Assembly: GCA_002269645.1 (NCBI GenBank)
Contig: NIVC01000555.1
Coordinates: 1 to 64,000 of the forward strand
Origin: Macrostomum lignano
Taxonomy: Eukaryota
Reading direction: 5' to 3'
Length of the DNA stretch: 64,000 nt
The notes under the pieces are model-generated. The model was not told where the DNA came from. It did not search any database and worked only from the letters and a program-made list of their open reading frames with translations. The position numbers were made by a program, and so were the translations under genes. How positions within the stretch are numbered: the first letter of the stretch is position 1; every line of letters begins with the position of its first letter. This document shows, one piece after another, positions 2,120 through 57,324 of the stretch.

Positions 2120-4060
2120 TTACTCAGCAATTTCCTCGTAGCCATTATGATCGTTGCTTTCGTTAATACCTGGGGGCGGCATAATATTTCGTTTCTTCTC
2201 TAGCGGAATACCATTCCTGCTTGATGATTCACTGAGCTCGGAACCTGCGTCCGTGCGGTCCACGGCCGCCTCCAGATAGGCCTCCAGATTGATTTTAATC
2301 ACCTGAAGCTCGGCCGCTTGTTGCTGCGTAGCTTCATTCTGGGACGCCTGGAGCTCTTCCACTTGTTTCTGGATGGCCTGGAGCTGTACTGCTAACTTCT
2401 GAGCTCCCTCATTCTGGGCCACCAGCTTCTGAGTAGTTTCATTCTGGACAGCTTTGAGTTCTTCCACTTGTTTCTGGATGGCCTGGAGCTGTACTGTTAG
2501 CTTCTCAGCTGCCTCATTCTGGACCACCTGCTTCTGAGTAGTATCATTCTGGGCCGCTTGGAGTTCCTCCACTTGTTTCTGGAGCTGGTCCTGAAGCTTT
2601 TGCTCATCACAAAGTCCAAGGTCTACTTCAAGACTTTTGGCTACACTTTCAATATTCATACATGACATCTCCTGAAAATTTTCAAGCTGAGCTCTTAATT
2701 TTTTCTTGGAGGAGACAAGTTTTGCTTTAACTTTCTGAAGTTCCTGCGCCGCTTTCACTAGCTGGCCAACTTCTTTGTATGTATACCACGAAAGACCCAC
2801 GACGGCTGCGATTCCGGCTGCAGCTGGCATTATTGTAGTCGTCACAACAGAAGCAGTTCCAACAACAGCGGCTGCAGAAACTGTCAGAGCAGTCTCAACT
2901 GGCTGAGAAGCTAAAGCTACAGCAGCATTATCGGCAGCAGAAACTGCCAGAGCAGTCTCAACTGGCTGAGAAGCTAAAGCTACAGCAGCATTATCGGCAG
3001 CAGAAACTGCCAGAGCAGTCTCAACTGGCTGAGAAGCTAAAGCTACAGCAGCATTATCGGCAGCAGAAACTGCCAGAGCAGTCTCAACTGGCTGAGAAGC
3101 TAAAGCTACAGCAGCATTATCGGCAGCAGAAACTGTCAGAGCAGTCTCAACTGGCTGAGAAGCTAAAGCTACAGCAGCATTATCGGCAGCAGAAACTGCC
3201 AGAGCAGTCTCAACTGGCTGAGAAGCTAAAGCTACAGCAGCATTATCGGCAGCAGAAACTGCCAGAGCAGTCTCAACTGGCTGAGAAGCTAAAGCTACAG
3301 CAGCATTATCGGCAGCAGAAACTGCCAGAGCAGTCTCAACTGGCTGAGAAGCTACAGCAGTATCAACGGATGTGGCAGCGCAATTTATTAATTTTTCTAC
3401 AGGCGCAGACGAAGAGGTAGCGACTGTTGGATTGGAGCTGCTCGACCAAAAAGTTGAAAAACTCAAAGGCCAAGCAAAGTAGATGTAGCCAATGGTAAAG
3501 GCTGCGAGTGCTGCTGCGCCCCCATATCCCAACCATCGACGCCAACTCGCACGATTTTCTAGGACGTCTTCCTGATCTTGGAGCGCTTTGATGAGCTGCT
3601 CAAGCACTTTGTCTGCTCTTTCTAACTGCTGCTGGAAAAACCTCATTGAGTCCGCGATACCTTCGACAAGAATTTTCGACTCCTGCAGTTTGTTGCTAAT
3701 AACTGCCGCAGTAGTGTTCTTTGTTTGGACGGATTTTCGTGAATCTCTTTTAGAAAATACGGTGAGTTTGAGGTCGGATTCAATTGGCACGTGATGTTGC
3801 TTCATAGCTTTCATACTGGAAGAAATAATCTTAATTTCCTTCACACCGTTCTGTAGATGAAGCAGTAGTTCCTCATAGTTGCCATCTCTTGGTGTACCAG
3901 ATTCTTCTTTTGCAAGTAGCTTCAGCGACTGATATAATTCATCAATAAACTTCTTGGTTTCACTTACAGTCGCAGTTGCTCTGGAGATCTCGCGGTTTTC
4001 GTTATGCACAGCGCGCAAACACTTCTTGAGATTTTTCAACTTTTTTGGATTGTCTGACAT
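2120..4060 (-). CDS. 646-aa single-exon coiled-coil protein with a split hydrophobic hairpin (ClyA/ApoL-like architecture) and internal 21-aa and 35-aa repeats
   Basis: Long open ORF. Heptad-rich N-terminus, WRRWLGYGGAAALAAFTIGYIYFAW at aa ~173-197, 21-aa repeats, a second hydrophobic helix (AAAVVGTASVVTTTIMPAAAGIAAVVGLSW), then a coiled-coil C-terminus. Confidence 0.8.
   Translation of the reverse strand: MSDNPKKLKNLKKCLRAVHNENREISRATATVSETKKFIDELYQSLKLLAKEESGTPRDGNYEELLLHLQNGVKEIKIISSSMKAMKQHHVPIESDLKLTVFSKRDSRKSVQTKNTTAAVISNKLQESKILVEGIADSMRFFQQQLERADKVLEQLIKALQDQEDVLENRASWRRWLGYGGAAALAAFTIGYIYFAWPLSFSTFWSSSSNPTVATSSSAPVEKLINCAATSVDTAVASQPVETALAVSAADNAAVALASQPVETALAVSAADNAAVALASQPVETALAVSAADNAAVALASQPVETALTVSAADNAAVALASQPVETALAVSAADNAAVALASQPVETALAVSAADNAAVALASQPVETALAVSAADNAAVALASQPVETALTVSAAAVVGTASVVTTTIMPAAAGIAAVVGLSWYTYKEVGQLVKAAQELQKVKAKLVSSKKKLRAQLENFQEMSCMNIESVAKSLEVDLGLCDEQKLQDQLQKQVEELQAAQNDTTQKQVVQNEAAEKLTVQLQAIQKQVEELKAVQNETTQKLVAQNEGAQKLAVQLQAIQKQVEELQASQNEATQQQAAELQVIKINLEAYLEAAVDRTDAGSELSESSSRNGIPLEKKRNIMPPPGINESNDHNGYEEIAE
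2315..2585 (-). repeat. Coding ~105-bp (35-aa, 5-heptad) repeat, ~2.6 copies
   Basis: QKQVEEL...QLQAI recurs every 35 aa in the 646-aa ORF. Confidence 0.8.
2874..3353 (-). repeat. Coding 63-bp VNTR (ASQPVETALAVSAADNAAVAL) x~7.6
   Basis: Near-identical 63-bp units. The Ala/Thr variant pattern A,A,A,T,A,A,A,T implies duplication of a 4-unit block. Confidence 0.95.
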
Positions 4061-4230
4061 GTCATCAAACGTCAGCAGTTAGTAGCTTCAGTAATAGTAA
4101 CAATTTTTTAACTTAGCTTATTTATACTTATTTATAATTAAAAATTATGTAGATTTATTAGTTAAAAACTCTGAAATCGTGTAGGCATTCCGATGAAGCA
4201 ACCTTTCTGTAAAAAAGTTACTTATTTTAG

Positions 4231-4325
4231 CGGATTTTCCTCGGCAATTCCATGGAAAAGCCTCTGCGCAGAAAGGAGTCGCGGTGAAATTTCCGCGGCA
4301 ATTCCGCAGGCTTTTTCTGGAAAAG
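4231..4325. promoter_or_regulatory. Cluster of Rel-family (kB/NFAT)-like motifs upstream of the 646-aa gene
   Basis: GGATTTTCC, GGCAATTCC x2, GAAATTTCC and TGGAAAAG x2 within ~95 bp. Confidence 0.3.
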
Positions 4326-5506
4326 CACACATTGAACAAGTTTTTTCATCATGCATATGCCACGCTGCTAATGCTTTTTGTCTCCTAAATCTCTTTGTTA
4401 AGACAAAGGGGGCAATGCAGACAAAATCTTCCGCGCGACAAAAATGCACTGCAGGAAAAAAACATTGCATTGGGAAAAAGTCGGTGGGAAAAACTGGGCG
4501 GGCAATTCGCTCGCGGGCAAATCTCCTGCGGGCTAATCATCTGGGGGCGATTCTGGTGCTTCCAGAATAAAGTCTGACTGTGCAAAAAACAAACGTTATT
4601 TACGAGTTTATTGTTTAGACACGAGAAACTTTCTCAGTCTATAGGAGGTCTACATAAAGAAGACCGTTAACTGGATATATATGTATGAAGCTCCTGATAT
4701 CAATTTCGAAGAAAAGGACCTTTATCATCACAACATGTCTCTTTAAGTTCTGACAATGGTAGATTGTGTAGCACATAACTGCCGAATTAAGTGAGTAATC
4801 ACGATATACATGTATATTGTGTTAAATTACTTCTTGCCAATACGCGCTCACGAGCCGTTTAAGCGGGCTTTTAGCGTTTAATGCACGCTGGATCGTACAT
4901 GTATTACAATGCATAAATATATGAGCTATTACACGCTGACAAGGACTATAGACACTTGTGAGCTTCTGCTTTTTATGCTTTTACCATAGCCCAAGCGCAA
5001 GCCGCTAGCCCAGTTACGATTGAAACCGTAGTGTTTTTTGCAAGGTTGCTAGGGCAGGACGAATTGTCTTGGTCGAATCTCTGCAGTTCCGCCCTGTGAC
5101 TTCTGAAGTCAACAACCGTGATGAGCCGCGTCTTTACTGGCGCCCCTGCACCCAGTACTGAGTGCAAACACAACACAAAATGCACTGTTCTTAGCTTGTA
5201 GAAGAGTCCGTGCGGGGTATAATGCCCAGCCCACAGTTTACAAGCCTAATGCATGAATACCAGAACAGCGCGCGACTGAAAATGAATTCAGACTATATTG
5301 TTTATCAGATCTTTAACTAGATTACGCTTATCTTAAATGTACAGAAAATAGTTTTCTTTCCTTCAGCGGAGTTAATTTAATTTGATATATATTGTCTATC
5401 GCAGCCATTTTAAAGTTACAGAACAGATTAAGTAAAATAAATTGATATCCGGGTGTACTCTGTAAGCTGAACTTGCAACACCTAGGCTTGAAACAATCAA
5501 GCGACA

Positions 5507-6478
5507 ATGTCCAATCAAAGTGAGGCATCGGCTGAGATGGCAAAAAATCTGGCATGCTGGAGCATAGTGCTGGACGCCACTCACAAGGTCGCCGAAGCTG
5601 TCAGGCAGATGGAGACGATAAAAGAAGGCCTACAGGACCTTCACGTCCGATGCGAGCAAATAACGGAGCTCGATTCGATTAGTTTCCAACTAGGCAAGGA
5701 GAAGCTCAAAGAATGCAAGACGAAAATCGACGAGCTAAGCCGAACTGGAGTTCCGCTGAAGGAACAGCATCAGTTTGTTGAGAAGTGCCTGACGCGGATG
5801 ATCAAATCTGGCAAGATCACGGAAGCCGACGTCAGTGAAATTCAGACTCAGCTGGACAACTCTATTGCCATCTCGAAGCAGCACCTGGAGGAGATGAAGA
5901 AGTTCCTAGTTAGCATGGAGAAGCTACGGGAGTTTTTCTCTAGCACAATCGCCGAGGTCGAGAAGGAGTCAAGCGAGTCCGACAAAAAAGCTACGAATTG
6001 GAAACGGTGGGGCTACGGCCTAGCCACGGCATTGTCTGGAGTTGCTGCCATCCTTGGCCTCTCCTGCAGTTTCATTGCTGCTGCAGCTGGTGGAGCTACT
6101 GCCTTGGGAGTTACAGCATTCGGGACGGCTTACGTAACCAAACTGAGCTCCAGCGAGCTGACAAAGAAAGCGGGGGTGCTCAGTGAGGCTGCTGCCGCTC
6201 TCCAGACCTGCCACCGCGCACTCGAAGCCCTGGAGCGGCAGGCGCGCCTGGGACCGATCTCGCTCAACGAGGAGCTCATCGACTCACTGCAACACGTGCT
6301 CCAAGTTTACAGCATGGTGCACAAGAGAGACCAGGAGATTGACCAGCTCAGGCTGGAAAACATCCAACTGGCGGCAGAACGCGAGCTAATCATAACCAAG
6401 GAGCGAGAAAAAGACGAAGAGATGAAGAGTCTTAAGATGGAGCTGGCCAGACTCAGGTCACGAGACGATTCGTCCTGA
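5507..6478 (+). CDS. 323-aa single-exon coiled-coil protein with a central hydrophobic hairpin (ClyA/ApoL-like architecture)
   Basis: Open ORF with GC3-rich codons. WKRWGYGLATALSGVAAILGLSCSFIAAAAGGATALGVTAFGTAY at aa ~165-209 is flanked by heptad repeats. Divergent from the 646-aa gene. Confidence 0.82.
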   Translation: MSNQSEASAEMAKNLACWSIVLDATHKVAEAVRQMETIKEGLQDLHVRCEQITELDSISFQLGKEKLKECKTKIDELSRTGVPLKEQHQFVEKCLTRMIKSGKITEADVSEIQTQLDNSIAISKQHLEEMKKFLVSMEKLREFFSSTIAEVEKESSESDKKATNWKRWGYGLATALSGVAAILGLSCSFIAAAAGGATALGVTAFGTAYVTKLSSSELTKKAGVLSEAAAALQTCHRALEALERQARLGPISLNEELIDSLQHVLQVYSMVHKRDQEIDQLRLENIQLAAERELIITKEREKDEEMKSLKMELARLRSRDDSS

Positions 6479-9275: not shown

Positions 9276-9285
9276 GTGAAAACAG

Positions 9286-10989
9286 ACAACAACAACAACA
9301 ACAAATTACGCGCCAGGGTCGGTGTTGGGCGTCACAGGTCGCGCCTCAGAGCACGGGAGCGGAGAAAGGCCGGTCCACCGGCCTGGTCGGGGGCGCCAGC
9401 ATCGGCCAGCAGGCAGTCCGGATACCGCCGAGTGCGCGCCTGCCCCCGCCGGAAGGGCGCCGGGAGCGCAGGCAGCAGCGTCTCCTGCGCCGGCTCGGGG
9501 CAGTACGCCTCAGCGCGGATGAGGTGGCCTGCCAGCTGGAGCCGCCGGCGGCGGAGCAGATCGCTGGGGCGGGCCAGGCGAGCTCGGGCGTACAGCGCCG
9601 CGTTAATGACATGCTCGCCGCCGCCGATCTTGAAGGCCTGTCGCTCGAGCGTCTCCGTCAGCGTCCATGTTTCAGCGTTGTAGAGCAGGACGGTCTCGAT
9701 CACCGCCTGGAACAACGCCGAGCGCTGGCGGTCTGGCAGGGCCGCAGAGTGCAGGACGGTCCTCATGGAGTTGAAGGCCGCCCAAGCGAGTCCACGGCGA
9801 CGCCTCAGGTCGTCGAAGGCGTCAGGTACCAGGCCGCCGAGGTACACGAACTGCTGAACGCGCGGCAGCAGCGTTGCCTGCCCATCAGCGCCTCGGCAGT
9901 AGATGTCGGCTTGGATGTTGGTGGGCATGGTGAGCACGACGGTCTTTTGCGTGTTGATCACCAGGCCGACGCTCGCAGCAACGCCAACCAGACGGTCCAG
10001 CTGACGTTGGGCGCCCTCGACGGTTGAGGACAGCAGGGCGAGATCATCGGCGTAGCCCAGGATGCTGAGGCGACGCTCCGGCTGGCGGCGGCCCACACGG
10101 CGTTGCAGGAGGAAGCCATCGTCGGCTGTTGGTAGGGCAGTCCGCAGCACCCAGTCCAGAACCAGTACAAACAGGAAGGGCGCCAGCGTGTCCCCCTGGA
10201 GCACTCCGGATGACGTGTCGAAGGTGTCCGAGAGGCCGTCTGGCGTCACCACCGCAGCTCTGGTGTTCTGGTACAGCGCCATCGTAGCACTGACCAGTTG
10301 CTGCGGCACGTTGTACGCTCTGAGCACCAGTGGAAGCGCGCTTCTGGCAACCGAGTCGAAAGCCTTCCTGAAGTCGACGAAGACCACGATCATGCTTGAC
10401 TGGCGCGTACGCGCCTCCTCGATGACTCGCCGAAGGGCCAGGATCTGCGTAACAGTGCCGCGTCTTGGCCAGAACCCGTTCTGCTCGGTCCGCAGATAGG
10501 GATCCAGCACGGGCTGCAACCGGGTAAGCAGGAGCCGGTTGAACAGCTTCGCGGCGATGGACATTAGGCAGATGCCTCGATGTTCCTCCAGCTTGGTGGT
10601 GCCAGGCTTCTTTGGTATGCTGACGATGTGTGCCATGGTCCATTCGGTAGGTGCTGGACCTCCGGCAAGCACGCTGTTGATCACACGGGTGACCTCAGTG
10701 GCCACGCAGTTGATGCGCAGCGCCTCGATTGGCACTTCGTCTGGACCCAGCGCCGTGCCACCCGGGGTCTTAAAGGCGAGGGTAACAACATCGGCAGGGG
10801 TGACTGGACTGGTGTTGAACTGCTCCACCGTTGGCACTGGTGTTTCAGGCGGCAGTTGCAGATCAGCTGGCAGCGTGGGCGGCGGCGGTGCATTGACGAT
10901 GGCGGCGAAGAACGTGCGCAGACTGTTCTTAGGCTCGTCCGGGGTGTCGCCTGCCAGGTTGAGCGCCGCCCGCTGATGACACGGTGATC
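9286..10989 (-). mobile_element. 5'-truncated RTE-clade-like non-LTR retrotransposon
   Basis: 10-bp TSD GTGAAAACAG at 9276-9285 and 10990-10999, a (TTG)n 3' tail at 9286-9304, and RT motifs DFRKAFDSV, GVLQGDTLAP, YADD and YLG. No endonuclease domain is present. Confidence 0.92.
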
Positions 10990-11047
10990 GTGAAAACAGG
11001 GAACCTTCCATAATTGCAATTGCGGCCTCGTCAATGCTGTTAGCCAT
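9332..11047 (-). CDS. 571-aa chimeric ORF: 19 N-terminal codons from the piggyBac transposase plus a non-LTR reverse transcriptase
   Basis: The ATG at 11047 (MANSIDEAAIAIMEGSLFS) lies outside the TSD-defined insert, and the frame stays open through the whole RT domain. Confidence 0.6.
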   Translation of the reverse strand: MANSIDEAAIAIMEGSLFSRSPCHQRAALNLAGDTPDEPKNSLRTFFAAIVNAPPPPTLPADLQLPPETPVPTVEQFNTSPVTPADVVTLAFKTPGGTALGPDEVPIEALRINCVATEVTRVINSVLAGGPAPTEWTMAHIVSIPKKPGTTKLEEHRGICLMSIAAKLFNRLLLTRLQPVLDPYLRTEQNGFWPRRGTVTQILALRRVIEEARTRQSSMIVVFVDFRKAFDSVARSALPLVLRAYNVPQQLVSATMALYQNTRAAVVTPDGLSDTFDTSSGVLQGDTLAPFLFVLVLDWVLRTALPTADDGFLLQRRVGRRQPERRLSILGYADDLALLSSTVEGAQRQLDRLVGVAASVGLVINTQKTVVLTMPTNIQADIYCRGADGQATLLPRVQQFVYLGGLVPDAFDDLRRRRGLAWAAFNSMRTVLHSAALPDRQRSALFQAVIETVLLYNAETWTLTETLERQAFKIGGGEHVINAALYARARLARPSDLLRRRRLQLAGHLIRAEAYCPEPAQETLLPALPAPFRRGQARTRRYPDCLLADAGAPDQAGGPAFLRSRALRRDL

Positions 11048-11368
11048 TTTAAGTCTCGCGAGAGTTGACTTAATTATACAGTAAAGTTCGACAAGTTTGT
11101 GTTATCAGGAAAAATTTGCTGCATGATTCTGAACTGTTTTTACAATAGACAGTTTTAAAATAAACTGTAGCCGTAAATTGACACAGTGCTCTGTGGTAGT
11201 GGGAAAGAGATTGAAGCCCCATGGTATGCGTGGCGTGCCATCCTTCAATAGTGACTGTTTTTCGAAAAAAGCTACTGGTTTTAAGAATTAGCAACAAGCA
11301 TTCAACTCGATGTACACAAGTCAACACAGGACTGACGAAACTCAGCCTAAGGGGGGGGGGGCAGGTCC

Positions 11369-11745: not shown

Positions 11746-12679
11746 ATTTTTTAAACAATTCCGAGTCTGAAGCAGTCTGGAATGGGTAAAAATAGGATAA
11801 AAAGAAAAAATTAACTTGGTCTTGCTTGTGGAAAGCCGGAGGCAATTATCGCAAATTCAAAAACTTTAAACACAAATAACGCTAATTATACTACTGAAAA
11901 CAGCAGATTCGCGAGCGAATTTTTTGAATGGTATATCAAGCTATTCTGGTACCTGTGCTATTTACCTAGCTTAAAAATGAACAATCAGAAGGAAAATATA
12001 AGTTAATTAATGTACTGCCCTGTTTAAACGAAAACAACGCAAGCTTCAAAACTAGCAATAGACGCAAATTTGATTGTAGTTCGTATTTATTTGTTATTTT
12101 AACTTCAACTTAAACTGATCGCGCCCAACAGAAAGCGGCAGTCTACCACTAGATACTGGAAGCAAAAAACATTAGAAATAGCAAATAGGTTGGTAAACAG
12201 AAAAAGCAGTTCATATAAAGCCTTTGAAAATCCAAGGGTAGAACACGGAGATAGCTGAATATGTTTAATGAGAATAGACTATATATACTACTAATGAGTG
12301 CATAGGAAAAATAACGCCTAATGACAGCGAAAAGTAATGAAAAATACGTACTTTAAACTACTAACAGTTACAAGTAGCTAGTGTCGAATTTGCTGTCTAG
12401 AATTTAGGATTCTTTTTATGCAAAAAGAATGCAACGATAAATTCTAATATGAAAGAGACTTTGGATTTAAACATATACTTTGGAGCGCCACTTGTGATTG
12501 ATTAATATTTAGAACACGTTAAGACAGCCGTGCTGTTACCGGGATACTGCGACAGACATTGAATAGATAAATTAGAACCGAAAGGAAGTAATGACTGACT
12601 GCATAAGGAGAGTGGCTGAAAATAGACAAGTATAGAGACATGGCAAGAGATACAGAAGTGTATAGAAAGATACAGACAC

Positions 12680-13735
12680 ATAGAGGGAGACAGAGAGGGA
12701 GACAGAGAGGGAGACATAAGGGGAGACAGAGAGGGAGACAGAGAGGGAGACAGAGAGGGAGACAGAGAGGGAGACAGAGAGGGAGACAGAGAGGGAGACA
12801 TAAGGGGAGACAGAGAGGGAGACAGAGAGGGAGACAGAGAGGGAGACATAAGGGGAGACAGAGAGGGAGACATAAGGGGAGACAGAGAGGGAGACAGAGA
12901 GGGAGACATAAGGGGAGACAGAGAGGGAGACAGAGAGGGAGACAGAGAGGGAGACAGAGAGGGAGACAGAGAGGGAGACAGAGAGGGAGACAGAGAGGGA
13001 GACAAAGAGACAGAGAAGGAGACAGAGAGGGAGACAGAGAGGGAGACAGAGGGAGACAGAGAGGGAGACAGAGGGAGACAGAGAGGGAGACAGAGGGAGA
13101 CAGAGAGGGAGACAGAGAGGCAGACAGAGAGGAGACAGAGAGGGAGACAGAGAGGGAGACAGAGAGGGGGACAGAGAGGGAGACAGAGAGGGAGACAGAG
13201 GGAGACAGAGAGGGAGACAGAGAGGGAGACAGAGAGGGAGACAGAGAGGGAGACAGAGAGGGAGACAGAGAGGGAGACAGAGAGGGAGACAGAGGGAGAC
13301 AGAGAGGGAGACAGAGAGGGAGACAGAGAGGGAGACAGAGAGGGAGACAGAGAGGGAGACAGAGAGGGAGACAGAGAGGGAGACAGAGAGGGAGACAGAG
13401 AGGGAGACAGAGAGGGAGACAGAGAGGGAGACAGAGAGGGAGACAGAGAGGGAGACAGAGAGGGAGACAGAGAGGGAGACAGAGAGGGAGACAGAGAGGG
13501 AGACAGAGAGGGAGACAGAGAGGGAGACAGAGAGGGAGACAGAGAGGGAGACAGAGAGGGAGACAGAGAGGGAGACAGAGAGGGAGACAGAGGGAGACAG
13601 AGAGGGAGACAGAGAGGGAGACAGAGGGAGACAGAGAGGGAGACAGAGAGGGAGACAGAGAGGGAGACAGAGAGGGAGACAGAGGGAGACAGAGAGGGAG
13701 ACAGAGAGGGAGACAGAGGGAGAAGCAGAGAGAAA
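12680..13735. repeat. Purine-rich (GAGGGAGACAGA)n 12-bp array
   Basis: Direct inspection; includes 10-bp and ACATAAGG variants. Confidence 0.95.
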
Positions 13736-13844
13736 GGCAGAGTCAGAGGTGCTGAGTGTAGGAACGTGAACAGTGATAAACTGCCAAGTTACAAAACGCG
13801 GAGACTCAGCCGACTCAAGTGCCTAGCAAGCCAGCAAGCGGTTG

Positions 13845-15676
13845 TCACATTTCCTCCACACTAACCGAGCGTTGGAATTCCGGCTTGACGCGGAACGCGG
13901 GCCCATGGCCGGGCACCACCGCCTGCGACTTGTGCAGAATTCGCTTGCGCTGGTCGGTCTGCACCTCCGAGTTGGCTGACCGGCTCATCCACTGGGCGTC
14001 GCCGTCGGCATTGAAGTCGGCCTCGGATTCGAACAGGTCGCCCGCCACGGCCACCTGCGGGAATGGCGTTGCGAAGGGGAATTGCTCAGGTGGCTATAAG
14101 GAGTCAGAGGGGAAACGCTCAGGTGGCTATAGAGGGGAATCGCTTAGGTGGCTATAAGGAGTCAGAGGGGAAACGCTCAGGTGGCTATAGAGGGGAATCG
14201 CTTAGGTGGCTATAAGGAGTCAGAGGGGAAACGCTCAGGTGGCTATAGAGGGGAATCGCTTAGGTGGCTATAAGGAGTCAGAGGGGAATCGCTCAGGTGG
14301 CTATAAGGAGTCAGAGGGGAATCGCTCAGGTGGCTATAAGGAGTCAGAGGGGAATCGCTCAGGTGGCTATAATGAGTCAGAGGGGAATTGCTCAGGTGGC
14401 TATAAGAAGTCAGAGGGAAATTTCAGAGGTGGCTATAAGGAGTCAGAGGAGAATTGCTCAGGTGGCTATAAGGAGTCAGAGGGGAATCGCTCAGGTGGCT
14501 ATAAGGAGTCAGAGGGGAATCGCTCAGGTGGCTATAATGAGTCAGAGGGGAATCGCTCAGGTGGCTATAATGAGTCAGAGGGGAATTGCTCAGGTGGCTA
14601 TAAGAAGTCAGAGGGAAATTTCAGAGGTGGCTATAAGGAGTCAGAGGAGAATTGCTCAGGTGGCTATAAGAAGTCAGAGGGAAATTTCAGAGGTGGCTAT
14701 AAGGAGTCAGAGGGGAATCGCACAGGTGGCTATAAGGAATCAGAGGGGAATCGCTCAGGTGGCTATAAGGAGTCAGAGGGGAATTGCTCAGGTGGCTATA
14801 ATGAGTCAGAGGGGAATTGCTCAGGTGGCTATAAGAAGTCAGAGGGAAATTTCAGAGGTGGCTATAAGGAGTCAGAGGAGAATTGCTCAGGTGGCTATAA
14901 GAAGTCAGAGGGAAATTTCAGAGGTGGCTATAAGGAGTCAGAGGGGAATCGCACAGGTGGCTATAAGGAATCAGAGGGGAATCGCTCAGGTGGCTATAAG
15001 GAGTCAGAGGGGAATCGCTCAGGTGGCTATAGAGGGGAATCACTCAGGTGGCTATAAGGAGTCAGAACGGAATTGTTCAGAAAACAAGGCAACTTATTAG
15101 AAGTAGCCATGACAGATAGCAGAAATATGTAAAGAAAAGCCTGTGTTGATATGAACTACATGACTAGGCGATCAAAACAGATTGAAAAAATAAACACCTA
15201 TAATTTCCTACCGTTATCTCGGACTCTCCCTCAGCCTTCATGGCCTCAAACAGCGGCCCCGAACTGGTCCTAACCAGCACGGTGACATCGTCGGACGAGT
15301 GTCCCGGCGTGTGTACAATCCGGACAAACTCGTCCAACTCGTAGGCGATGCCGGACCGAAAATCGTGGGCCAGAAATCGATCAGGAGATTGAGCAATATC
15401 GCAGCCGACAATCATGAGTTTGTTAGGACAGCCGGTTGAGAACATGGCCAGATTGCCGATGTGATCCACGTGACCGTGCGTGCAGATCACCATGCTGATG
15501 CTGGAGGCTGAGAGGCCGCGAGCAGTCAGCAAGTTGGTTAGCAGGTCGGCCTCCCAGGGACCGCCAGTGTCGATGAGGATGTGCTGGTTGGCTCCGCTAA
15601 CCAGGGTGATGGTGCAGGCGCTGCGCTCGTCTGAGCTGTAGCCAGCTCTGAGCACCTCGACTGAGTATGGCGAGGC
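13845..15676 (-). CDS. MBLAC1: Metallo-beta-lactamase domain-containing protein 1; exons 15676-15212 and 14054-13845; start codon not located
   Basis: Motifs LIDTG, THGHVDHIGN, TPGHS, VAGDLFE and VVPGHGPAF. A phase-0 GT..AG intron (15211-14055) joins EIT|VAVAGD. Confidence 0.88.
14075..15065. repeat. 33-bp intronic minisatellite (MBLAC1 intron)
   Basis: GGTGGCTATAAGGAGTCAGAGGGGAATCGCTCA x~28, plus 25-bp variants. Confidence 0.95.
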
Positions 15677-19097: not shown

Positions 19098-19876
19098 CGA
19101 CACTAACACAAAATAGACTTGAGCAAAAGAATATGGATATTATATAAATGATTAAAAGAAACAACATATGAATGCAAGTATTTTGTAGGCTACACAAGAA
19201 TATTTCAAGGAGTATATAGGACTAATTAGTTAATTATTAATTAGCAAAAGGAAGATTCATTTTGTGGCCTACATATGTTTAGAGTATTCTATATATTATA
19301 TTCTAGAAAGGTATGTACTATTACATATATTTACCTTATTGATATATATTGGCCTTTTCCTTTTTATGGAAGATATCAGGATTGCCACAATAAAAGTAGG
19401 TATTTTTGGATTCTATTTTGTAGTGTAGCTGCTTATAAACATAAACATGTCTTGATACGCTGTCTTATAACAAAGAAATTTGTATTGCTATCCTGTCCTT
19501 CCTCTACTTTTTCAGTTTTACTTGGGTCTTTGCCTTTTGTCACAAAAGAAATCCTGCATTTTGAATATTAAATTAATAGTAATTTCTTCTCTTATTGTAG
19601 AAAAGTTTATATGCCTATCATAAATCCTAGTACAAAAATTTTCAATCAATAATTTTAATGGAATGTCAAACATTGCTTAAATATTGATTTTTCATGCTTT
19701 GCACCTTCTCTGACTTTAATCGATTGCAATAGCAGGCTTTGCCAACAGTTTCTCTTAAACTTTCTCTTTTGCAAGAGAAGAAAGTTGCCATCAAATCAGT
19801 GTTATAAGTTCGCTACTGCTGTAGGGATACAGAATCTCAAATCCTGTGTAGAAGTCACGTGAACTATTCGCACATC

Positions 19877-29162: not shown

Positions 29163-29199
29163 TTGAGCGTGCAATCCCAACACTCGACGACTACGACAA

Positions 29200-38300: not shown

Positions 38301-39608
38301 AACCTGATCACGTGACCGAATAGCCCTCGAATCACCGTGTAGTTAATTAGCGACTGCACCGACTCGATTGACAGCTGCAGGTAGAAGCTGAAATTTGATT
38401 TGTGCGGCTGAAATTCCATGAGTTTTCAGTTGTTGCTGCTTAGCTAATGCGCTATTGGCTTATTGTAGGCTAATGATTGCAGGCTATCAGATAAATTATA
38501 CCTGCATGTGCGAATACCTGACACCGAGTTAATTAGCTACCTGACACTGAGTTAATTAGCTACCTGACACTGAGTTAATTAGCTACCTGACACTGAGTTA
38601 ATTAGCTACCTGACACCAGGTTAATAAGCTACCTGACACCAAGTTAATTAGCTACCTGAAACCAAGTTAATTAGCTCGCTGACACATGCTGATAGGCAAC
38701 TTGTACCTGTAGGTAAGTTAATTAACTATCTAAAATAGTAATTTGTTTACATGACACCAAGGATACAGTTTTCTGGACACAGCAAACTTAAAATAGAATT
38801 TCCATGGTCCTACCGCTCCAACCATCGTCACTAACCTGCTGTACTTGCAGTGCAGAGCCAGCCTTGAGCAGTCGTACTTCACCACGCCCAGAAGGTGACC
38901 GGTGAGCAGCAAGCGATGCACGCTGTCGTCAACTGACATCTGACTGGCGTTGATCCGGCAGTCGTTGAGCACTTCAATCACGTGTTTGCCCATCTCATAG
39001 TAAGTTGACTCCTCCAGCTTGTGACCCAGGACTTCAATATCCTTGATATCGATGAACGGACTCTCCCTGAAGTAGTCCTTGTACAGCTGCGTAGTCTGGG
39101 CGGCAATGTTCACCTTGGAGTAGATGAGGAACACAATGAGGCTGATGGCGCTGAGGATGTGCGGAGCCGAAACCTCGGTGGTCATGGCGGCTGACAGCAG
39201 CGCCTGGTGGCAGTTGATGCAGCACAGGTCGCCGTCCTTGACTTTCTGGTTGTGATAATAGGCCAGCTTCATTATGTAGTAGATTCTGACGACCGACTCT
39301 AATAAGTATAGAAGCAGCAGGACTAGAAACACCTCACTCCAGATGCCGTAGTTCATGTGTGACAGCAGTACAGATCTGCTCATAGCCGCGTGACTGAATG
39401 CATAATTCTTGACGCTGATCTTCAGAACAATGCCCAGTTGAGTCAGGTAGAAAGTGAAATCGGCTATGCAGAACATTATTAGAGCCAATTCTGAATAGAA
39501 TATCACACGGAGCTTAGTGAAGTATCGAACAGTTTCCTGCAAAATGTCCAAGTAGTATTTCAGCTGCTGCGTCAATGTCGTTAAGGAAATTTTTTTGTGC
39601 TCAAGCAT
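35310..39608 (-). CDS. Orphan membrane protein, ~572 aa; exons 39608-38814, 38374-38109, 36823-36518, 35661-35310
   Basis: Three GT..AG introns with consistent phases (0, 2, 2); exons total 1719 nt. Hydrophobic segments in exon 1 and a Q-rich disordered C-terminus. The first donor choice is uncertain. Confidence 0.65.
35662..36480. repeat. ~28-bp intronic minisatellite
   Basis: TTTTGGCGCCGTCTCTGACTGTCTACCA units. Confidence 0.92.
36858..38062. repeat. 15-bp intronic minisatellite
   Basis: CCAGGGGCGCCAGCA and CCAGGGGCTTTAGCA units in variant blocks. Confidence 0.97.
38515..38690. repeat. 23-bp intronic minisatellite
   Basis: AGTTAATTAGCTACCTGACACTG x~7. Confidence 0.9.
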
Positions 39609-47553: not shown

Positions 47554-52092
<4,539 letters not shown>

Positions 52093-52752: not shown

Positions 52753-53745
<993 letters not shown>

Positions 53746-53863
53746 AAATTAATGGACCTCTTGGTCAATCGATTTTATGTGGCTTTATTGACTGATTGAT
53801 TGATAGATTGATGATCGATTTGATTGATCGATTCATTCATCACTCTCTCCAAACCTCCCAGCA

Positions 53864-54115
53864 ATGTCAGCCCACTTCGAACTCGATGAGCTGAGCCAGA
53901 GCTCCGAGAGCTACACAGTTGTCGAAGTGACCGTGGTGGAGTACTCGCTGAACTTTTTGGCTGTCATAACTCTGCTGCTTCTAATAGCAATCGTGGCGGC
54001 TGCATTCAAGAATGTATTGGTCAAGGACAAAAGCCAGGCCAGCAGGTCCATAACGGTTGTGGCCCAGCCTCTCAGAGCCAACAAAGCGAGCACTAAAGAA
54101 GTCTCAATCGTTTGA
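53864..54115 (+). CDS. Candidate 83-aa single-pass membrane microprotein
   Basis: Acidic N-terminus, hydrophobic LNFLAVITLLLLIAIVAAAF and a basic tail; GC3-rich codons in AT-rich surroundings. Confidence 0.45.
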   Translation: MSAHFELDELSQSSESYTVVEVTVVEYSLNFLAVITLLLLIAIVAAAFKNVLVKDKSQASRSITVVAQPLRANKASTKEVSIV

Positions 54116-54551
54116 GTCAGCCAGTTGCTAAGTATTGACAGGGGCTAATTCTGCACAAGAAATTGTATATTGCGTACTATTAGTAGACCTTGGCGCATCT
54201 GACCCGAATAAAATTTGCTTTAATGTGCAATTTTAAAGAAAAACTTTGCGACAGCTAAAATGCAAATATAAAATCCAATTCTTTATGCATAAAACCAAAG
54301 CAAGTTTGGTAAAATAAAACTGAAATTTCAAACTTCCCGGCAGAAAGATTTTCACACAAACCTTTAATTTCCAATTTGCACTGTCAAATATATTTTTATG
54401 AAGTGGTCTTCATTGAAATTGGGCCGTATATATTGATATTTTAGAGTACAGTTTATAATTCACAGTTTGATGAGGGAGGGTAGTTCGTATTTGAAGATGG
54501 CTGCATGTGTGCATGCGTTATGTATTGGCTACATGTACATGTACCACCATT

Positions 54552-54938
54552 ACATGACACTGCCACCTTTCATGACTCAGCCACCTTCCATGACACTGCC
54601 ACCTTCCATGACACTGCTGCCTTCCATGACACTGCTACCTTCCATGACACTGCCACCTTCCATGACACTGCTACCTTCCATGACACTGCCACCTTCCATG
54701 ACACTGCTGCCTTCCATGACACTGCCACCTTCCATGACACTGCCACCTTCCATGACACTGCTACCTTCCATGACACTGCCACCTTCCATGACAGTGCTAC
54801 CTTCCATGACTCTGCCACCTTCCATGACACTGCTGCCTTCCATGACACTGCTGCCTACCATGACACTGCCACCTTCCATGACACTGCCACCTTGCATGAC
54901 ACTGCCACCTTCCATGACAGTGCTACCTTCTATGACAC
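54552..54938. repeat. 18-bp minisatellite
   Basis: CCATGACACTGCCACCTT x~21. Confidence 0.95.
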
Positions 54939-55572
54939 TAGCATATTCTTACAGCAGCGTTACATCCCAAGAATCATTACAGAAGAGTTCTGCACTATTT
55001 GCACGGAAACAAATATATTAAGAGAACTGCATCTAAGAATTTCTCGTTAAGAAAAATATTTATCTATAGTTGCAATGTACACTGACCAGCTGCCAAAAAA
55101 GTAATTTTTAAATTAACAGCCTCTTAGCTTAGAGCATCAACAGCGCAAGACCGTTGGGTTTAATGCAAAAGACAGAGAAGTAGAAAGATAAAGTGTGCTC
55201 AAATAATAATAACGCTCGTAGTTGTTATTCTCAAACTGTTCTTTTAATGCCGTCTTTATCAACTAGAAAATGGTTGAAAAACACAAGTTGTGACCCAGTG
55301 AGCTCTGCATATTCAGAAAGCTTTATGCGAGCTGCAAAAAAGTCGTACAATTCCATGTGTCCCTATCATCATGCAGCGTACATTTTTCAGCAAAGAAAGG
55401 GAACTTCATCAAAAAACAAAACGTGAGTTGTATGGGTGCAAAAAAGCATATTTTCGGTTAAAAGTCTTGAGTACGCACAAGTGGGCCCATAAGCAACAAG
55501 ATTTTAAAGTTAATTTTTTGCTTGCGGGCAATGTCATTGAATTGAATATAGTGTAGATTGGCCTATATATTC

Positions 55573-55840
55573 AATAGAAAGTTATAGACGTCTCCAATAC
55601 GCATTATTCCTACGTCCCCAAGACGAACGTGTTGCATTTTTAAGTCAAATTTACAAGAAGTTTGATTTTTGGCTTAAGTTTGGAGAATAAATATTGCTTC
55701 GAGACATGACACAGCTAGGTATGGTTAATGTTTTGCAATTGAATTTGCAAACTTGATCTTAAAATCAAAATGAATCGTCTCTGAGACGTCCATACGGCCA
55801 CATCCCTAAAGAATATATTGGAGACGTTTAACTTTCTATT
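55573..55840. mobile_element. MITE-like element
   Basis: Inverted ends AATAGAAAGTTATAGACGTCTCCAATA / TATTGGAGACGTTTAACTTTCTATT. Confidence 0.55.
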
Positions 55841-56397
55841 AAGTCCACTCATTTGTCGTACGGGATATACATGTAGAAGGGCTAAAAAGGTTAAAACGGT
55901 AACTACGGCAATAATGTGACATGTCAGCCGCCAGGGGAAAGATTAATAGAGCATGACAGATCAATCTGACACGCGACCCTTCTTTGTTCGGTGCTGACGG
56001 CTATGCACTATCAATAACAAATTGAGTCTTCGTAGCAAGAGTCTTATATTTGAACTTTGACTGATTGTATTTAATTGTATTATTTATTTGATCTGACAAG
56101 ATTTAAACTACGAGCTATTGCCGTTAAATCATTGGTAGTGAGTTATAGTGAACAGGCACCACGCGGCGGACCAACCAGAAAGCACGCACAAAACCAAAGA
56201 ATAAGAGCAAAATCGCGGTTTAACCGTTTTTAAATAATACAACGCTCATATTTCTATGAAGGATACAGTAAAACAAATTTTAGGCGTTCAATATTGAATA
56301 ACTTATAAATTCACTAATGAATAGTAGATAAAATAATATAATGCTAAAGAGAAATTAATAATACCAAATTATTTTTTAAAAATAAATATCAACATCG

Positions 56398-57324
56398 TTA
56401 CAAATCATCGGAATCACTGCTGACTGAAATTCCTAACTCGGCAAGTTTAGCCAAGAGCTTTCTTTCTTTTCTCTCTTTCTTATCCAGTGCGTCCTTGACT
56501 CGTTTCTCTCTGTTTCTTCCAGTTTCGATGTTTTTTTCCATCTCTGCTGTATTTTTTTCCAGGCTCGAAATCAAGTTGGACAGTCGATTCAGCTCCCGAA
56601 GCGTCGCGTTCATTCTTCCACGAGCTTGGCTAAACGTTTCAGAGAGGCTACGAAGAGTACCGGACGTAACGTTAGTCCAAGCAGCAGTGCCTACGCAGAC
56701 CGTTGTCAGGCTTCCAGCAGCGAACATCACTACAGGAGCAGCCGTGCCAGCAGTCGCCACTGTCGCTGCAGCTGCACCCAAGCCAAAGACTGCTGCTGCA
56801 CCGTAGCCTTTTTGTTTTCTGTTGGATTCCTCTTCTCTCTTGCGAGCCGCTTCCTTCGCTAGCTCTTCAACTAAGAGGGAGCAGTCATTGATGGCGGTGG
56901 ACAGTCTGGCTCGAGTCTCAGAGTATTGCTCTTCGCAAGCTTCACACTTTTTCAAAAGTTTTTGCATATCTTCCAACAGTTTGTCAAGTTCGTCGGAGCT
57001 TAAACTTTTCTTATCACTGCTGGATTTTTTAAAATCATCTGCAAATCCGTCCCATTTTTCGCAGAGCTTAAGGCACCTTCCTTTCAATCCTTCTGCAGAG
57101 GATTTTGCATTGTCCATCGAGTTGAAAAAATCTTTTCTCTTACTGTCTAGGCTAGAAGGACAATCTGGGAGATTCACCAGCTCATCTCTTGCTTTTGTTG
57201 TGGAATTGCAAAGTTCGGAAGAGAATTTTTCTGCCTCTGACGCAATCACTTTGGCATTTTCCGTGCCTATTTTCGTAAGCCATTGGGCGATTGAGTTGTG
57301 GTCGTAGTCTCCTCCTTGAGCCAT
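56398..57324 (-). CDS. 308-aa coiled-coil protein with a central hydrophobic hairpin (ClyA/ApoL-like architecture)
   Basis: KGYGAAAVFGLGAAAATVATAGTAAPVVMFAAGSLTTVCVGTAAW at aa ~172-216 between heptad regions. Possible 5' UTR intron at 57461-57334. Confidence 0.82.
   Translation of the reverse strand: MAQGGDYDHNSIAQWLTKIGTENAKVIASEAEKFSSELCNSTTKARDELVNLPDCPSSLDSKRKDFFNSMDNAKSSAEGLKGRCLKLCEKWDGFADDFKKSSSDKKSLSSDELDKLLEDMQKLLKKCEACEEQYSETRARLSTAINDCSLLVEELAKEAARKREEESNRKQKGYGAAAVFGLGAAAATVATAGTAAPVVMFAAGSLTTVCVGTAAWTNVTSGTLRSLSETFSQARGRMNATLRELNRLSNLISSLEKNTAEMEKNIETGRNREKRVKDALDKKERKERKLLAKLAELGISVSSDSDDL

What the first reader, a model, noticed from the sequence alone, without database searches (positions are those of the whole stretch)
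2120..57324. Three-gene family with ClyA-type alpha-pore-forming-toxin / ApoL-like architecture in an animal genome
Seen: three intronless ORFs (2120-4060 -, 5507-6478 +, 56398-57324 -) share a ~170-aa helical N-terminus. Each then has a basic/Trp lead-in and GYG (aa 178-180, 169-171, 173-175), ~40 aa of Ala/Gly/Thr-rich hydrophobic hairpin, and a coiled-coil C-terminus; elsewhere they are very divergent. Known: ClyA/HlyE (303 aa, hydrophobic tongue at ~180-200), Nhe/Hbl, YaxAB/XaxAB and MakABE have this layout, have no signal peptide, and often work as 2-3 divergent components; ApoL proteins are animal membrane-lytic analogues. Inference: this could be an undescribed multi-component cytolytic or innate-immune effector system.
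Basis: partly seen in the sequence, partly recalled or inferred. Interest (0 to 1): 0.8.

Follow-up and report, generated by a model that had tools for sequence, protein, structure and literature searches.

The report
Flatworm helical-bundle membrane-hairpin protein family
Three genes in this Macrostomum lignano (flatworm) window belong to a real, fast-evolving, unnamed protein family whose shape, a long four-helix bundle tipped by a greasy Gly/Ala-rich hairpin, looks like bacterial ClyA-type pore-forming toxins, but neither kinship with those toxins nor pore formation could be demonstrated.

Summary
The window is Macrostomum lignano contig NIVC01000555. ORFs A (2120-4060 -), B (5507-6478 +) and C (56398-57324 -) are intact. 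GYG sits at the stated residues, followed by an uncharged Gly/Ala/Thr-rich stretch of 44-45 residues in B and C. In A that stretch is split by a ~180-residue insert containing a 7.8-copy 21-aa tandem repeat. Leave-one-out profile tests show one family: 50-104 bits, against at most 26 for architecture-preserving shuffles. M. lignano has at least 10 members, and distant relatives occur in unidentified eukaryote assemblies.

AlphaFold2 gives B and C the same four long helices, with the hairpin between helices 3 and 4. Foldseek ranks ClyA-superfamily proteins (AhlB, Hbl-B, AhlC, SmhB, ClyA) as the best natural matches for both, but E stays at or above 0.046 and TM at or below 0.51, and designed bundles score as well.

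Sequence links to Hbl-L1, LeoBC, SLATT and XaxA mostly disappear under reversed or shuffled controls. ApoL gives nothing. DUF677 is borderline and seen in C only.

Verdict: a new family with α-pore-former-like architecture. The toxin or immune-effector function and the multi-component idea remain unproven. Interpretation partly supported.

The parts
2120..4060 (-). Gene A, 646 aa. Family member with three N-terminal helices, two separated hydrophobic segments, and a long repeat-containing C-terminal coiled coil.
   Evidence: ORF. Leave-one-out family HMM 50 bits, against shuffle maximum 22. Family HMM 211 bits. A public model of a near-identical protein is PAA80992.1.
3434..3535 (-). A, first hydrophobic segment (aa 176-209, WLGYGGAAALAAFTIGYIYFAWPLSF...).
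   Evidence: Uncharged run.
2869..3358 (-). A, in-frame 63-bp x 7.8 tandem repeat (21-aa unit ASQPVETALAVSAADNAAVAL) inserted between the two hydrophobic segments. Copy number differs in the second genomic copy (about 5.5 units).
   Evidence: TRF, 98% matches. Comparison with L012.
2777..2893 (-). A, second hydrophobic segment (aa 390-428).
   Evidence: Uncharged run, KD19 up to 1.89.
2324..2583 (-). A, 105-bp x 2.5 repeat encoding 35-aa coiled-coil units (QKQVEELQA...).
   Evidence: TRF; translation.
4061..5506 (.). 1.45-kb spacer between the divergently oriented genes A and B. Presumed shared promoter region (inferred only).
   Evidence: Head-to-head arrangement. The same arrangement occurs in the second copy, L012.
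5507..6478 (+). Gene B, 323 aa. Family member with four long helices (2-51, 58-101, 106-174, 215-322).
   Evidence: ORF. AF2 pLDDT 71, pTM 0.54. Leave-one-out HMM 56 bits, against shuffle maximum 22.
6008..6139 (+). B, hydrophobic hairpin (aa 168-211, WGYGLATALSGVAAILGLSCSFIAAAAGGATALGVTAFGTAYVT).
   Evidence: Uncharged run, G+A 0.45, 13 small-xxx-small motifs. pLDDT<50 in the model.
56398..57324 (-). Gene C, 308 aa. Family member with four long helices (9-50, 57-102, 110-180, 213-296).
   Evidence: ORF. AF2 pLDDT 79, pTM 0.68. Leave-one-out HMM 104 bits. dN/dS 0.41-0.65 against paralogues.
56674..56808 (-). C, hydrophobic hairpin (aa 173-217, GYGAAAVFGLGAAAATVATAGTAAPVVMFAAGSLTTVCVGTAAWT). 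Together with helix 3 it is the most conserved part in the C clade.
   Evidence: Uncharged run. Identity 69-73% against 31-50% in helices 1, 2 and the C-terminal half of helix 4.

Best explanation
Shown: A, B and C are intact genes of one lineage-expanded, fast-evolving eukaryotic protein family that has no name in public databases. A typical member (~300 aa, no signal peptide) folds into an elongated antiparallel bundle of four long helices. A 41-69-residue uncharged, Gly/Ala/Thr-rich segment, flanked by basic residues, links helix 3 to helix 4 at one tip of the bundle.

Inferred mechanism: the protein is made in the cytosol. The tip segment inserts into a membrane as a helical hairpin while the bundle stays on the side it came from. 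The many small-xxx-small motifs let hairpins of several subunits pack together. The assembled protein then perturbs or permeabilises that membrane. This is the working principle of ClyA-type alpha-pore-formers, of intracellular ApoL proteins and of bacterial 2TM effectors. The variable C-terminal coiled coil would mediate oligomerisation or partner binding.

The resemblance to ClyA is one of architecture and mode of action. Common descent is not shown. A is a derived member whose two hydrophobic segments are separated by a polymorphic repeat loop, so it is more likely a constitutively membrane-spanning protein.
For: - Family reality: leave-one-out HMM scores of 50-104 bits, against at most 26 for block-preserving shuffles. 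An exhaustive search finds about 12 distant relatives with the same length and layout. dN/dS of 0.41-0.65 shows the coding sequence is under selection.
- Fold: B and C, 13-16% identical, each give four long helices with near-coincident boundaries, with the hydrophobic segment between helices 3 and 4.
- Membrane-hairpin character: uncharged runs of 41-69 residues, mean Kyte-Doolittle hydropathy 1.1-1.7, G+A 0.40-0.61, basic flanks. These values match the ClyA tongue (1.61; 0.48) and the Hbl-L1 head (1.64; 0.48), taken from real sequences.
- Functional weight on the hairpin: helix 3 and the hairpin are the best conserved parts (about 70% identity, against 31-50% elsewhere).
- ClyA-superfamily chains are the best natural Foldseek matches for both models: AhlB pore E 0.063; Hbl-B prob 0.99, TM 0.47; AhlC TM 0.51; ClyA prob 0.97-0.99, TM 0.42-0.45 over ~300 columns.
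- Conflict-gene-like dynamics: tandem arrays, near-identical duplicates, a copy with a deleted hairpin, a variable-number tandem repeat (VNTR) inside a coding region.
Against: - No structural match is significant (none at E<=1e-3; TM at most 0.51). Designed four-helix bundles, F-BAR domains and axonemal coiled coils score similarly.
- The hairpin itself is modelled at pLDDT<50, so its conformation is unknown.
- Sequence links to toxins fail the controls.
- In a eukaryotic cytosol, a 45-69-residue uncharged segment is most simply a constitutive membrane anchor.
- A's 180-residue insert is incompatible with a tight tongue.
- dN/dS below 1 gives no sign of positive selection.
- There is no expression, localisation or activity data for any member.
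Confidence: 0.4

Rival explanations
1. Constitutive hairpin-anchored scaffold or tether. The two hydrophobic helices are a permanent membrane anchor, for example in the ER, the mitochondrial outer membrane or lipid droplets. The cytosolic four-helix bundle and C-terminal coiled coil act structurally (tethering, organelle shaping, cytoskeleton attachment), with no permeabilising activity. Mitofusin HR1-TM-HR2 and plant DUF677/AT14A have this layout.
For: - No signal peptide, with a long uncharged segment flanked by basic residues on both sides (positive-inside hairpin).
- A tolerates a 180-residue polymorphic loop between the two segments.
- C-terminal coiled coils vary in length and are built of repeats.
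- C reaches the Pfam gathering score of DUF677, a plant membrane-protein family (29.1 bits). Reversed and shuffled C do not hit it.
- LeoBC stalk-paddle-GED hits for P0014 and P0015 exceed their reversed controls (41.6 vs 23.1 bits; 37.8 vs none).
Against: - The hairpin is unusually poor in large aliphatic residues (LIVFMW 0.24-0.39, mean KD 1.1-1.7). It resembles the toxin tongues more than typical permanent transmembrane helices (the comparison with typical TM helices rests on general knowledge).
- The family evolves fast and turns over in copy number, which is unusual for housekeeping scaffolds.
- No BDLP, mitofusin or other membrane-tether structure appears among the top 50 fold hits.
- DUF677 is hit by only 2 of 17 members.
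Confidence: 0.33
2. True homologue of the bacterial ClyA/Hbl/Nhe/Ahl superfamily, either acquired horizontally or ancient. It would act as a two- or three-component cytolysin in which divergent paralogues (A/B, C/P0004-like, the hairpin-less neighbour) play the roles of the A, B and C toxin components.
For: - ClyA-superfamily chains head the natural fold hits for both models.
- The family profile hits Hbl-L1 in PDB sequences at E 1.5e-6, and hhalign gives prob 96% over 209 columns.
- Sub-threshold NCBIfam hits to XaxA (8/17), MakA, MakE and HblD.
- The local motif at the start of the tongue is alike: ClyA EAYAGAAAG, C KGYGAAAV.
- A hairpin-less helical paralogue lies 1 kb upstream of P0004 and shares its C-terminus at E 4e-9.
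- The A-B pair is retained in the duplicate locus.
Against: - Calibrated controls remove most of the signal. The reversed Hbl-L1 profile still gives prob 71%. Block-preserving shuffles of Hbl-L1 reach 29-31 bits against 25-28 for the real sequence.
- ClyA, Hbl-L2 and Hbl-B give nothing.
- No Pfam HlyE or HBL hit at E<=1.
- All NCBIfam scores are about 100 bits below their cut-offs.
- The model has four helices, not the five-helix tail of ClyA, Hbl-B and NheA (the five-helix tail is from general knowledge).
- The second A-B locus is 99.6% identical at the DNA level, so its retention says nothing about selection for pairing.
Confidence: 0.15
3. GTPase-less derivative of a dynamin-like protein. 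The family would descend from the middle-domain, paddle and GED half of a LeoBC/BDLP/mitofusin-type protein and act in membrane fusion or fission or in vesicle release.
For: PADLOC LeoBC matches 12 of 17 members collinearly over profile positions ~300-590 of 601, with a best E of 2.1e-11. [quoted passage not shown]
Against: - Reversed family sequences hit the same model at 23-30 bits. Reversed P0011 scores better than forward P0011.
- Genuine Hbl-L1 toxins also hit it at 20-22 bits.
- The window proteins B and C do not hit it at E<=1e-3.
- There is no GTPase domain.
- No BDLP, LeoA or mitofusin chain appears in the top 50 fold hits.
Confidence: 0.05

Closest known systems
ClyA-superfamily alpha-pore-forming toxins, especially components with a long hydrophobic head (Hbl-L1/NheB/AhlB/SmhB), and ClyA itself
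   Same: - About 300-400 aa, an elongated bundle of long antiparallel helices.
- An uncharged Gly/Ala-rich segment of 27-60 residues at ~0.58-0.72 of the length, between the third and fourth long helix, flanked by basic residues.
- Best natural fold matches for both models.
- ClyA likewise lacks a signal peptide (general knowledge).
   Different: - No significant sequence or fold similarity once controls are applied.
- Four rather than five bundle helices.
- Eukaryotic, cytosolic synthesis.
- C-terminal coiled-coil extensions built of repeats.
- One member (A) carries a 180-residue insert inside the hydrophobic region.
- Pore formation is untested.
Apolipoprotein L (ApoL1-6), intracellular or secreted membrane-lytic proteins of animals
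   Same: An animal protein of similar size with a helical bundle, a Gly-rich hydrophobic helix-loop-helix and a C-terminal leucine-zipper-like helix. Most ApoLs lack a signal peptide. (These ApoL features are general knowledge.)
   Different: No Pfam ApoL (PF05461) hit at E<=1 in any of 17 members. No ApoL chain among the listed PDB sequence or fold hits. Genuine Hbl-L1 scores better against ApoL (E 0.015) than this family does.
Plant DUF677 / UPF0496 (AT14A-like) membrane proteins, Pfam PF05055
   Same: C aligns almost end to end (residues 97-305 to profile 105-322 of 336) at exactly the gathering score of 29.1 bits. Reversed and shuffled C do not. The layout is the same: helices, two hydrophobic helices, then helices.
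   Different: Only C (29.1 bits) and its 92% paralogue P0003 (15.7 bits) hit. P0004, B, A and all the distant members do not. DUF677 is described as mainly a green-plant family with a drought-stress role (PMC13471261).
LeoBC (Eleos) / bacterial dynamin-like protein stalk-paddle-GED module; mitofusin HR1-TM-HR2
   Same: Helical stalk, Gly-rich hydrophobic paddle and a returning helix. Collinear HMM matches for 12 of 17 members.
   Different: No GTPase domain. The matches are mostly reproduced by reversed sequences and by unrelated Hbl-L1 toxins. No fold hit.
SLATT 2TM effector domains of bacterial conflict systems
   Same: Two adjacent hydrophobic helices followed by a helix. Sub-threshold hits in 9 of 17 members with Pfam and 7 of 17 with NCBIfam.
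   Different: All scores are below the gathering score (best 21.6 against 26.3). Reversed C also hits a SLATT model at 18 bits. SLATT lacks the ~170-residue N-terminal three-helix part.

Membership tests
ClyA superfamily (ClyA/HlyE, Hbl, Nhe, Ahl/Smh, Xax/Yax, Mak) | Elongated tail of long antiparallel helices | tested here: met
   AF2 models of C (pTM 0.68) and B (pTM 0.54) each have four helices of 42-108 residues. The models show four helices, not the five of the canonical tail.
ClyA superfamily (ClyA/HlyE, Hbl, Nhe, Ahl/Smh, Xax/Yax, Mak) | Hydrophobic tongue or head inserted between the third and fourth long helix, at ~55-70% of the chain | tested here: met
   Uncharged runs at relative position 0.50-0.75, with the same composition as the ClyA 177-203 tongue and the Hbl-L1 234-293 head. 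Not met in A, where the region is split by a 180-residue insert.
ClyA superfamily (ClyA/HlyE, Hbl, Nhe, Ahl/Smh, Xax/Yax, Mak) | Significant sequence or profile similarity to a family model (Pfam HlyE/Bacillus_HBL; NCBIfam XaxA/Mak/Hbl) | tested here: not met
   No Pfam hit at E<=1. NCBIfam hits are ~20 bits against cut-offs of ~125. hhalign to Hbl-L1 gives 96% against 71% for the reversed control. In the HMM test Hbl-L1 scores 25-28 bits while shuffles reach up to 31; ClyA scores 7 bits.
ClyA superfamily (ClyA/HlyE, Hbl, Nhe, Ahl/Smh, Xax/Yax, Mak) | Significant structural superposition on a solved member | tested here: inconclusive
   These chains are the top natural hits for both models, but E is 0.046-0.9 and TM 0.25-0.51. 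Designed bundles score equal or better. The hairpin is modelled at pLDDT<50.
ClyA superfamily (ClyA/HlyE, Hbl, Nhe, Ahl/Smh, Xax/Yax, Mak) | Soluble-to-membrane switch and an oligomeric pore; synergy between components | not testable with these tools
   Needs protein biochemistry. No multimer prediction was available.
Apolipoprotein L | Match to the ApoL domain (Pfam PF05461) | tested here: not met
   No hit at E<=1 in 17 members, nor at E<=0.1 in the four further members scanned.
Apolipoprotein L | Fold similarity to solved ApoL1 domains | tested here: not met
   No ApoL chain in the top 50 Foldseek PDB hits of either model.
DUF677 / UPF0496 (PF05055) | Score at or above the Pfam gathering threshold across family members | tested here: inconclusive
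   C scores 29.1 bits, equal to the threshold, and the controls are negative. P0003 scores 15.7 bits. No other member hits.
Dynamin-like proteins (LeoBC/BDLP/mitofusin) | Dynamin-type GTPase domain | tested here: not met
   The proteins are ~300 aa and all-helical. LeoBC matches are confined to profile positions ~300-590. No P-loop NTPase family is listed.
Dynamin-like proteins (LeoBC/BDLP/mitofusin) | Specific similarity of the stalk-paddle-GED module | tested here: inconclusive
   Forward scores reach 41.6 bits, but reversed sequences give 23-30 bits and Hbl-L1 gives 20-22 bits. No fold hit.
SLATT 2TM effectors | Score above the gathering threshold of a SLATT model | tested here: not met
   Best score 21.6 bits against 26.3. 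Reversed C hits SLATT_fungal at 18.3 bits.

The most novel reading that the evidence does not exclude
Animals (at least macrostomid flatworms and some unidentified eukaryotes) encode their own ClyA-type alpha-pore-forming proteins. These would be a multi-paralogue, possibly multi-component cytolytic system, made in the cytosol without a signal peptide and used for defence, prey killing or regulated cell lysis. They would be related to the bacterial tripartite toxins either by ancient descent or by horizontal transfer.
Probability: 0.15. Interest if true: 0.85.

Novelty: new variant of a known kind. Interest (0 to 1): 0.45.

Why it matters
If these proteins permeabilise membranes, they would be the first ClyA-like alpha-pore-formers described in an animal. 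My literature searches found no such report. They would also add a new class of intracellular membrane-attack proteins beside ApoL, gasdermins and MLKL. M. lignano is a good organism for testing this because RNAi and transgenesis are available (general knowledge).

Even if they turn out to be plain membrane anchors, the work still defines an unannotated, rapidly evolving eukaryotic family. It also gives a cautionary result: HMM hits between 'helical bundle plus Gly/Ala-rich hairpin' families (Hbl-L1, LeoBC, SLATT, ApoL, viral fusion proteins) reach E-values of 1e-5 to 1e-8 from architecture and composition alone.

Tried and rejected
- **Word-seeded homologue searches with B, C and the 17-sequence profile.** These found only M. 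lignano paralogues plus two Logan proteins.
- **LeoBC / dynamin-like origin.** It looked strong (E 2e-11, 12 of 17 members), but it is rejected as evidence of homology. Reversed family sequences and real Hbl-L1 toxins hit the same model at 20-30 bits.
- **SLATT.** Sub-threshold in every member, and reversed C also hits a SLATT model.
- **Hbl-L1 homology.** PDB profile hit at E 1.5e-6 and hhalign prob 96%, but not better than architecture-preserving shuffles.
- **PADLOC LmuB, JetC and DruC; NCBIfam SMC and Rad50; Pfam EzrA, IMD and spectrin.** Coiled-coil noise.
- **PDB sequence search with C and with A1.** Nothing significant.
- **BFVD fold search.** Only tail fibres, tape-measure proteins and t-SNAREs, all at E>=0.03.
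- **Scans for prokaryotic or viral relatives.** The alignments were too degenerate to seed a genome-contig scan. The viral scan with GxFT[FA]G[IL]GT gave 37 pattern matches, none confirmed.
- **Literature.** Nothing on the gene identifiers, and nothing on ClyA-like families in animals.
- **dN/dS for A and B.** The second locus is 99.6% identical at the DNA level, which is too close to be informative.
- **Source organisms of the distant members.** Only sample accessions were obtained: SRR27456854, SRR29844786 and ERZ25072293.

Full report
**Source and observation**

The window comes from the free-living flatworm Macrostomum lignano, assembly GCA_002269645.1, contig NIVC01000555.1. GYG lies at the stated residues.

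B and C each carry one uncharged stretch, of 44 and 45 residues (168-211 and 173-217), rich in Gly, Ala and Thr and preceded by a basic stretch. None of the three proteins has an N-terminal signal-peptide-like segment. A differs from the description. Its hydrophobic part is two segments (176-209 and 390-428) separated by about 180 residues. That insert includes a 63-bp unit repeated 7.8 times at 98% identity. A second repeat of 105 bp x 2.5 lies in the C-terminal coiled coil.

**Are the three proteins related?**

Pairwise BLASTP is marginal: B-C E=4e-4 over the hairpin region, A-B 0.012, A-C nothing. An exhaustive HMMER search of 1.84 billion representatives with a family profile returned 18 proteins. 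About a dozen of these are distant, unnamed proteins of 280-350 aa with the same layout.

I then ran leave-one-out tests. Each window protein was scored against a profile built without it. I also scored 500 shuffles that keep the hydrophobic block in place, and the reversed sequence. C scores 104 bits, B 56, and A with its repeats removed 50. The shuffles never exceed 26 bits and reversed sequences never exceed 17. With a profile made only of non-window members the scores are 105, 49 and 33 bits. The family is therefore real and not an effect of composition.

The family is much larger than three genes. A family HMM finds at least 10 members on the four M. lignano loci I fetched. These include a tandem trio on contig NIVC01000020 and P0004-like copies next to the C-type genes. 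GYG is not conserved across the family.

**Selection and dynamics**

C and its paralogues give Nei-Gojobori dN/dS of 0.65 (P0003, dS 0.058), 0.43 and 0.41 (P0004, dS about 0.6). These are real coding genes under relaxed purifying selection. Within that clade, helix 3 and the hairpin are the best conserved parts (about 70% identity, against 31-50% for helices 1, 2 and the distal part of helix 4).

The divergent A-B pair and the neighbouring metallo-beta-lactamase-fold gene recur on contig NIVC01000230. That copy is 99.6% identical at the DNA level, so it is an allele or a very recent duplicate and says little about selection. It differs by a 1-nt deletion in an A-run of B and by about 5.5 rather than 7.8 repeat units in A. 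The truncated public models of B (PAA80991.1, PAA87469.1) are explained by such single-base differences.

**Fold**

AlphaFold2 with the 17-18-sequence family alignments gives C pLDDT 79 and pTM 0.68, with helices at 9-50, 57-102, 110-180 and 213-296. It gives B pLDDT 71 and pTM 0.54, with helices at 2-51, 58-101, 106-174 and 215-322. In both models the hydrophobic segment is an unresolved loop (pLDDT<50) between helices 3 and 4.

Foldseek against the PDB finds nothing at E<=1e-3 for either model.
- For C, the top of the list is AhlB pore and pre-pore (E 0.063-0.2), Hbl-B (prob 0.99, TM 0.47/0.43), AhlC (prob 0.97, TM up to 0.51), SmhB and ClyA. These are interleaved with F-BAR domains, designed bundles and the trypanosome HpHb receptor.
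- For B, de novo four-helix bundles come first. ClyA follows (4phq E 0.046, prob 0.99; 1qoy prob 0.97, TM 0.42/0.45 over ~300 columns), then AhlC.
- No dynamin-like, mitofusin or ApoL chain appears in either top 50.

ClyA-superfamily toxins are thus the closest natural shapes for both paralogues. The match is at the level of 'long helical bundle' and is not statistically significant. The viral structure library adds nothing.

**Sequence-level links and their controls**

Several libraries gave tempting hits.
- Pfam DUF677 on C, at exactly the gathering score.
- SLATT_1, sub-threshold in 9 of 17 members.
- NCBIfam XaxA in 8 of 17, plus MakA, MakE and HblD.
- PDB Hbl-L1 at E 1.5e-6 with the family profile.
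- PADLOC LeoBC in 12 of 17 members, best E 2.1e-11. The matches are collinear with the C-terminal half of that model. From the published description of LeoB, that half corresponds to middle domain, Gly-rich paddle and GED (PMC4159319).

I fetched real ClyA (E. coli hlyE) and twelve Hbl/Nhe-family proteins from Bacillus plasmids and ran controls.
- **hhalign.** The family against Hbl-L1 gives prob 96% and score 69.5 over 209 columns. Against the reversed Hbl-L1 alignment it still gives prob 71% and score 42.5 on the hydrophobic block. ClyA, Hbl-L2 and Hbl-B give under 5%, no better than their reversed versions.
- **Calibrated HMM test.** Hbl-L1 scores 25-28 bits against the family. Architecture-preserving shuffles reach 29-31 bits, and 1-5 of 500 score at least as high as the real sequence. 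ClyA scores 7 bits.
- **LeoBC.** Reversed family members hit LeoBC at 23-30 bits. Reversed P0011 beats forward P0011. Genuine Hbl-L1 toxins hit LeoBC collinearly at 20-22 bits. Only P0014 and P0015 rise clearly above this background.
- **SLATT and cross-hits.** Reversed C hits a SLATT model at 18 bits. Hbl-L1 itself cross-hits Pfam ApoL and viral fusion glycoproteins.
- **DUF677.** Reversed and shuffled C do not hit it, but no other paralogue reaches it either.
- **ApoL.** No member hits ApoL.

All these links reflect a shared architecture: amphipathic helices, a long Gly/Ala-rich uncharged block, then another helix. None establishes common descent. DUF677 remains an open, weak lead.

**What it most likely is and does**

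Shown:
- It is a eukaryotic family that is unnamed in the public sources I could query.
- Members are made without a signal peptide.
- They have a four-helix bundle and a conserved 41-69-residue hairpin-like segment rich in small residues at the tip.
- The segment's length, relative position (0.50-0.75), hydropathy (1.1-1.7) and G+A content (0.40-0.61) match the ClyA tongue and the Hbl-L1 head.

Inferred: the tip inserts into a membrane as a helical hairpin from the side where the bundle sits. Hairpins of several subunits pack through small-xxx-small motifs. The assembly perturbs or permeabilises the membrane. This is an alpha-pore-former or ApoL-like mode of action, and I give it about 0.4.

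The main rival, at about 0.33, is a permanent hairpin anchor carrying a structural coiled-coil scaffold. It is favoured by cytosolic synthesis, by A's large luminal-type insert and by the repeat-built C-termini. True ClyA-superfamily membership with multi-component action gets about 0.15. It is suggested by the fold ranking, by a hairpin-less paralogue next to P0004 and by the paired or tandem arrangement, but it is not supported by any controlled statistic. A dynamin-stalk origin gets about 0.05.

**Verdict**

The family is a new variant of a known architectural kind. Interest is moderate: the strong reading would be remarkable, but the present evidence is mostly resemblance.

Noticed in passing
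L002:8179-8985 (+) (same contig as the window, NIVC01000555.1:203449-224348): A 268-aa all-helical ORF without any hydrophobic hairpin lies 1 kb upstream of the family gene P0004. It shares P0004's C-terminal 44 residues at 45% identity (E 4e-9). It may be a hairpin-less paralogue. No equivalent lies next to C in the window.
   Followed up: partly
L002:1849-2505 (+) and L002:1593-1886 (+): A P0004-like copy in which most of the hydrophobic hairpin is deleted (...KGNFAALVSFGAAVLGRLSDKF...) and the N-terminus is in a separate ORF. It looks like a decaying family member.
   Followed up: partly
window 55501-58359 compared with L002:7560-11413: The flanks of the C locus and the P0004 locus are 84-96% identical at the DNA level. 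The segment holding the gene is not alignable by blastn (57% protein identity, dS about 0.6), and L002 has an extra gene there. This looks like a replaced or much older segment inside a young duplication.
   Followed up: partly
window 2869-3358 compared with L012:5509-5856: The in-frame 63-bp repeat of gene A has about 7.8 copies here and about 5.5 in the 99.6%-identical second locus. This is a coding variable-number tandem repeat (VNTR) between the two hydrophobic segments.
   Followed up: yes
window ~5983-5988 and ~6127 (gene B): Public protein models of B end early, inside or just before the hairpin. PAA80991.1 has 209 aa and PAA87469.1 has 171 aa. Their divergent tails are exactly what 1-nt deletions at these two sites would produce. 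These may be homopolymer or indel errors of long-read assembly, or real null alleles.
   Followed up: partly
L011:2448-3401, 4988-5878, 10001-10846 (+) (contig NIVC01000020.1): Three family genes lie in tandem (P0010 type, NWGAAG instead of GYG). The first has charged residues inside the hydrophobic block, so it may be degenerating.
   Followed up: partly
window 29200-33146 (+); 61344-63715 (-); 9332-11047 (-): Transposable elements. The first is an apparently intact Ty3/gypsy-type element: a gag-like ORF with DUF7041, then RT, RNase H and integrase. The second is a fragmented LTR-element pol (RT/RNase H, integrase zinc-binding domain and integrase core in three ORFs). The third is a reverse-transcriptase-only ORF.
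   Followed up: yes
window 15164-15655 (-) and 22888-23445 (+): ORF fragments with metallo-beta-lactamase-fold and WD40 Pfam domains. They are probably exons of ordinary host genes. The lactamase-fold gene is also the neighbour of the A-B pair in L012.
   Followed up: partly
window 12502-13755, 14206-15100, 19864-20709, 22037-22813, 36892-38323, 50226-51150, 54467-55050, 59631-60947: Many micro- and minisatellite arrays create long spurious ORFs on both strands, with strong GC or AT skew. Several recur at the paralogous loci L001 and L002.
   Followed up: no
L006:3125-4342 (Bacillus wiedmannii plasmid, hblD) as control: A genuine Hbl-L1 toxin weakly hits Pfam ApoL (E 0.015), viral Fusion_gly and DUF726, and PADLOC LeoBC (E 5.6e-5). 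Families built of helices plus a Gly/Ala-rich hydrophobic block cross-match one another.
   Followed up: yes
window 38730-39608 (-): A 292-aa ORF with several hydrophobic stretches and no Pfam match, in an AT-rich region. Its status is unknown.
   Followed up: no
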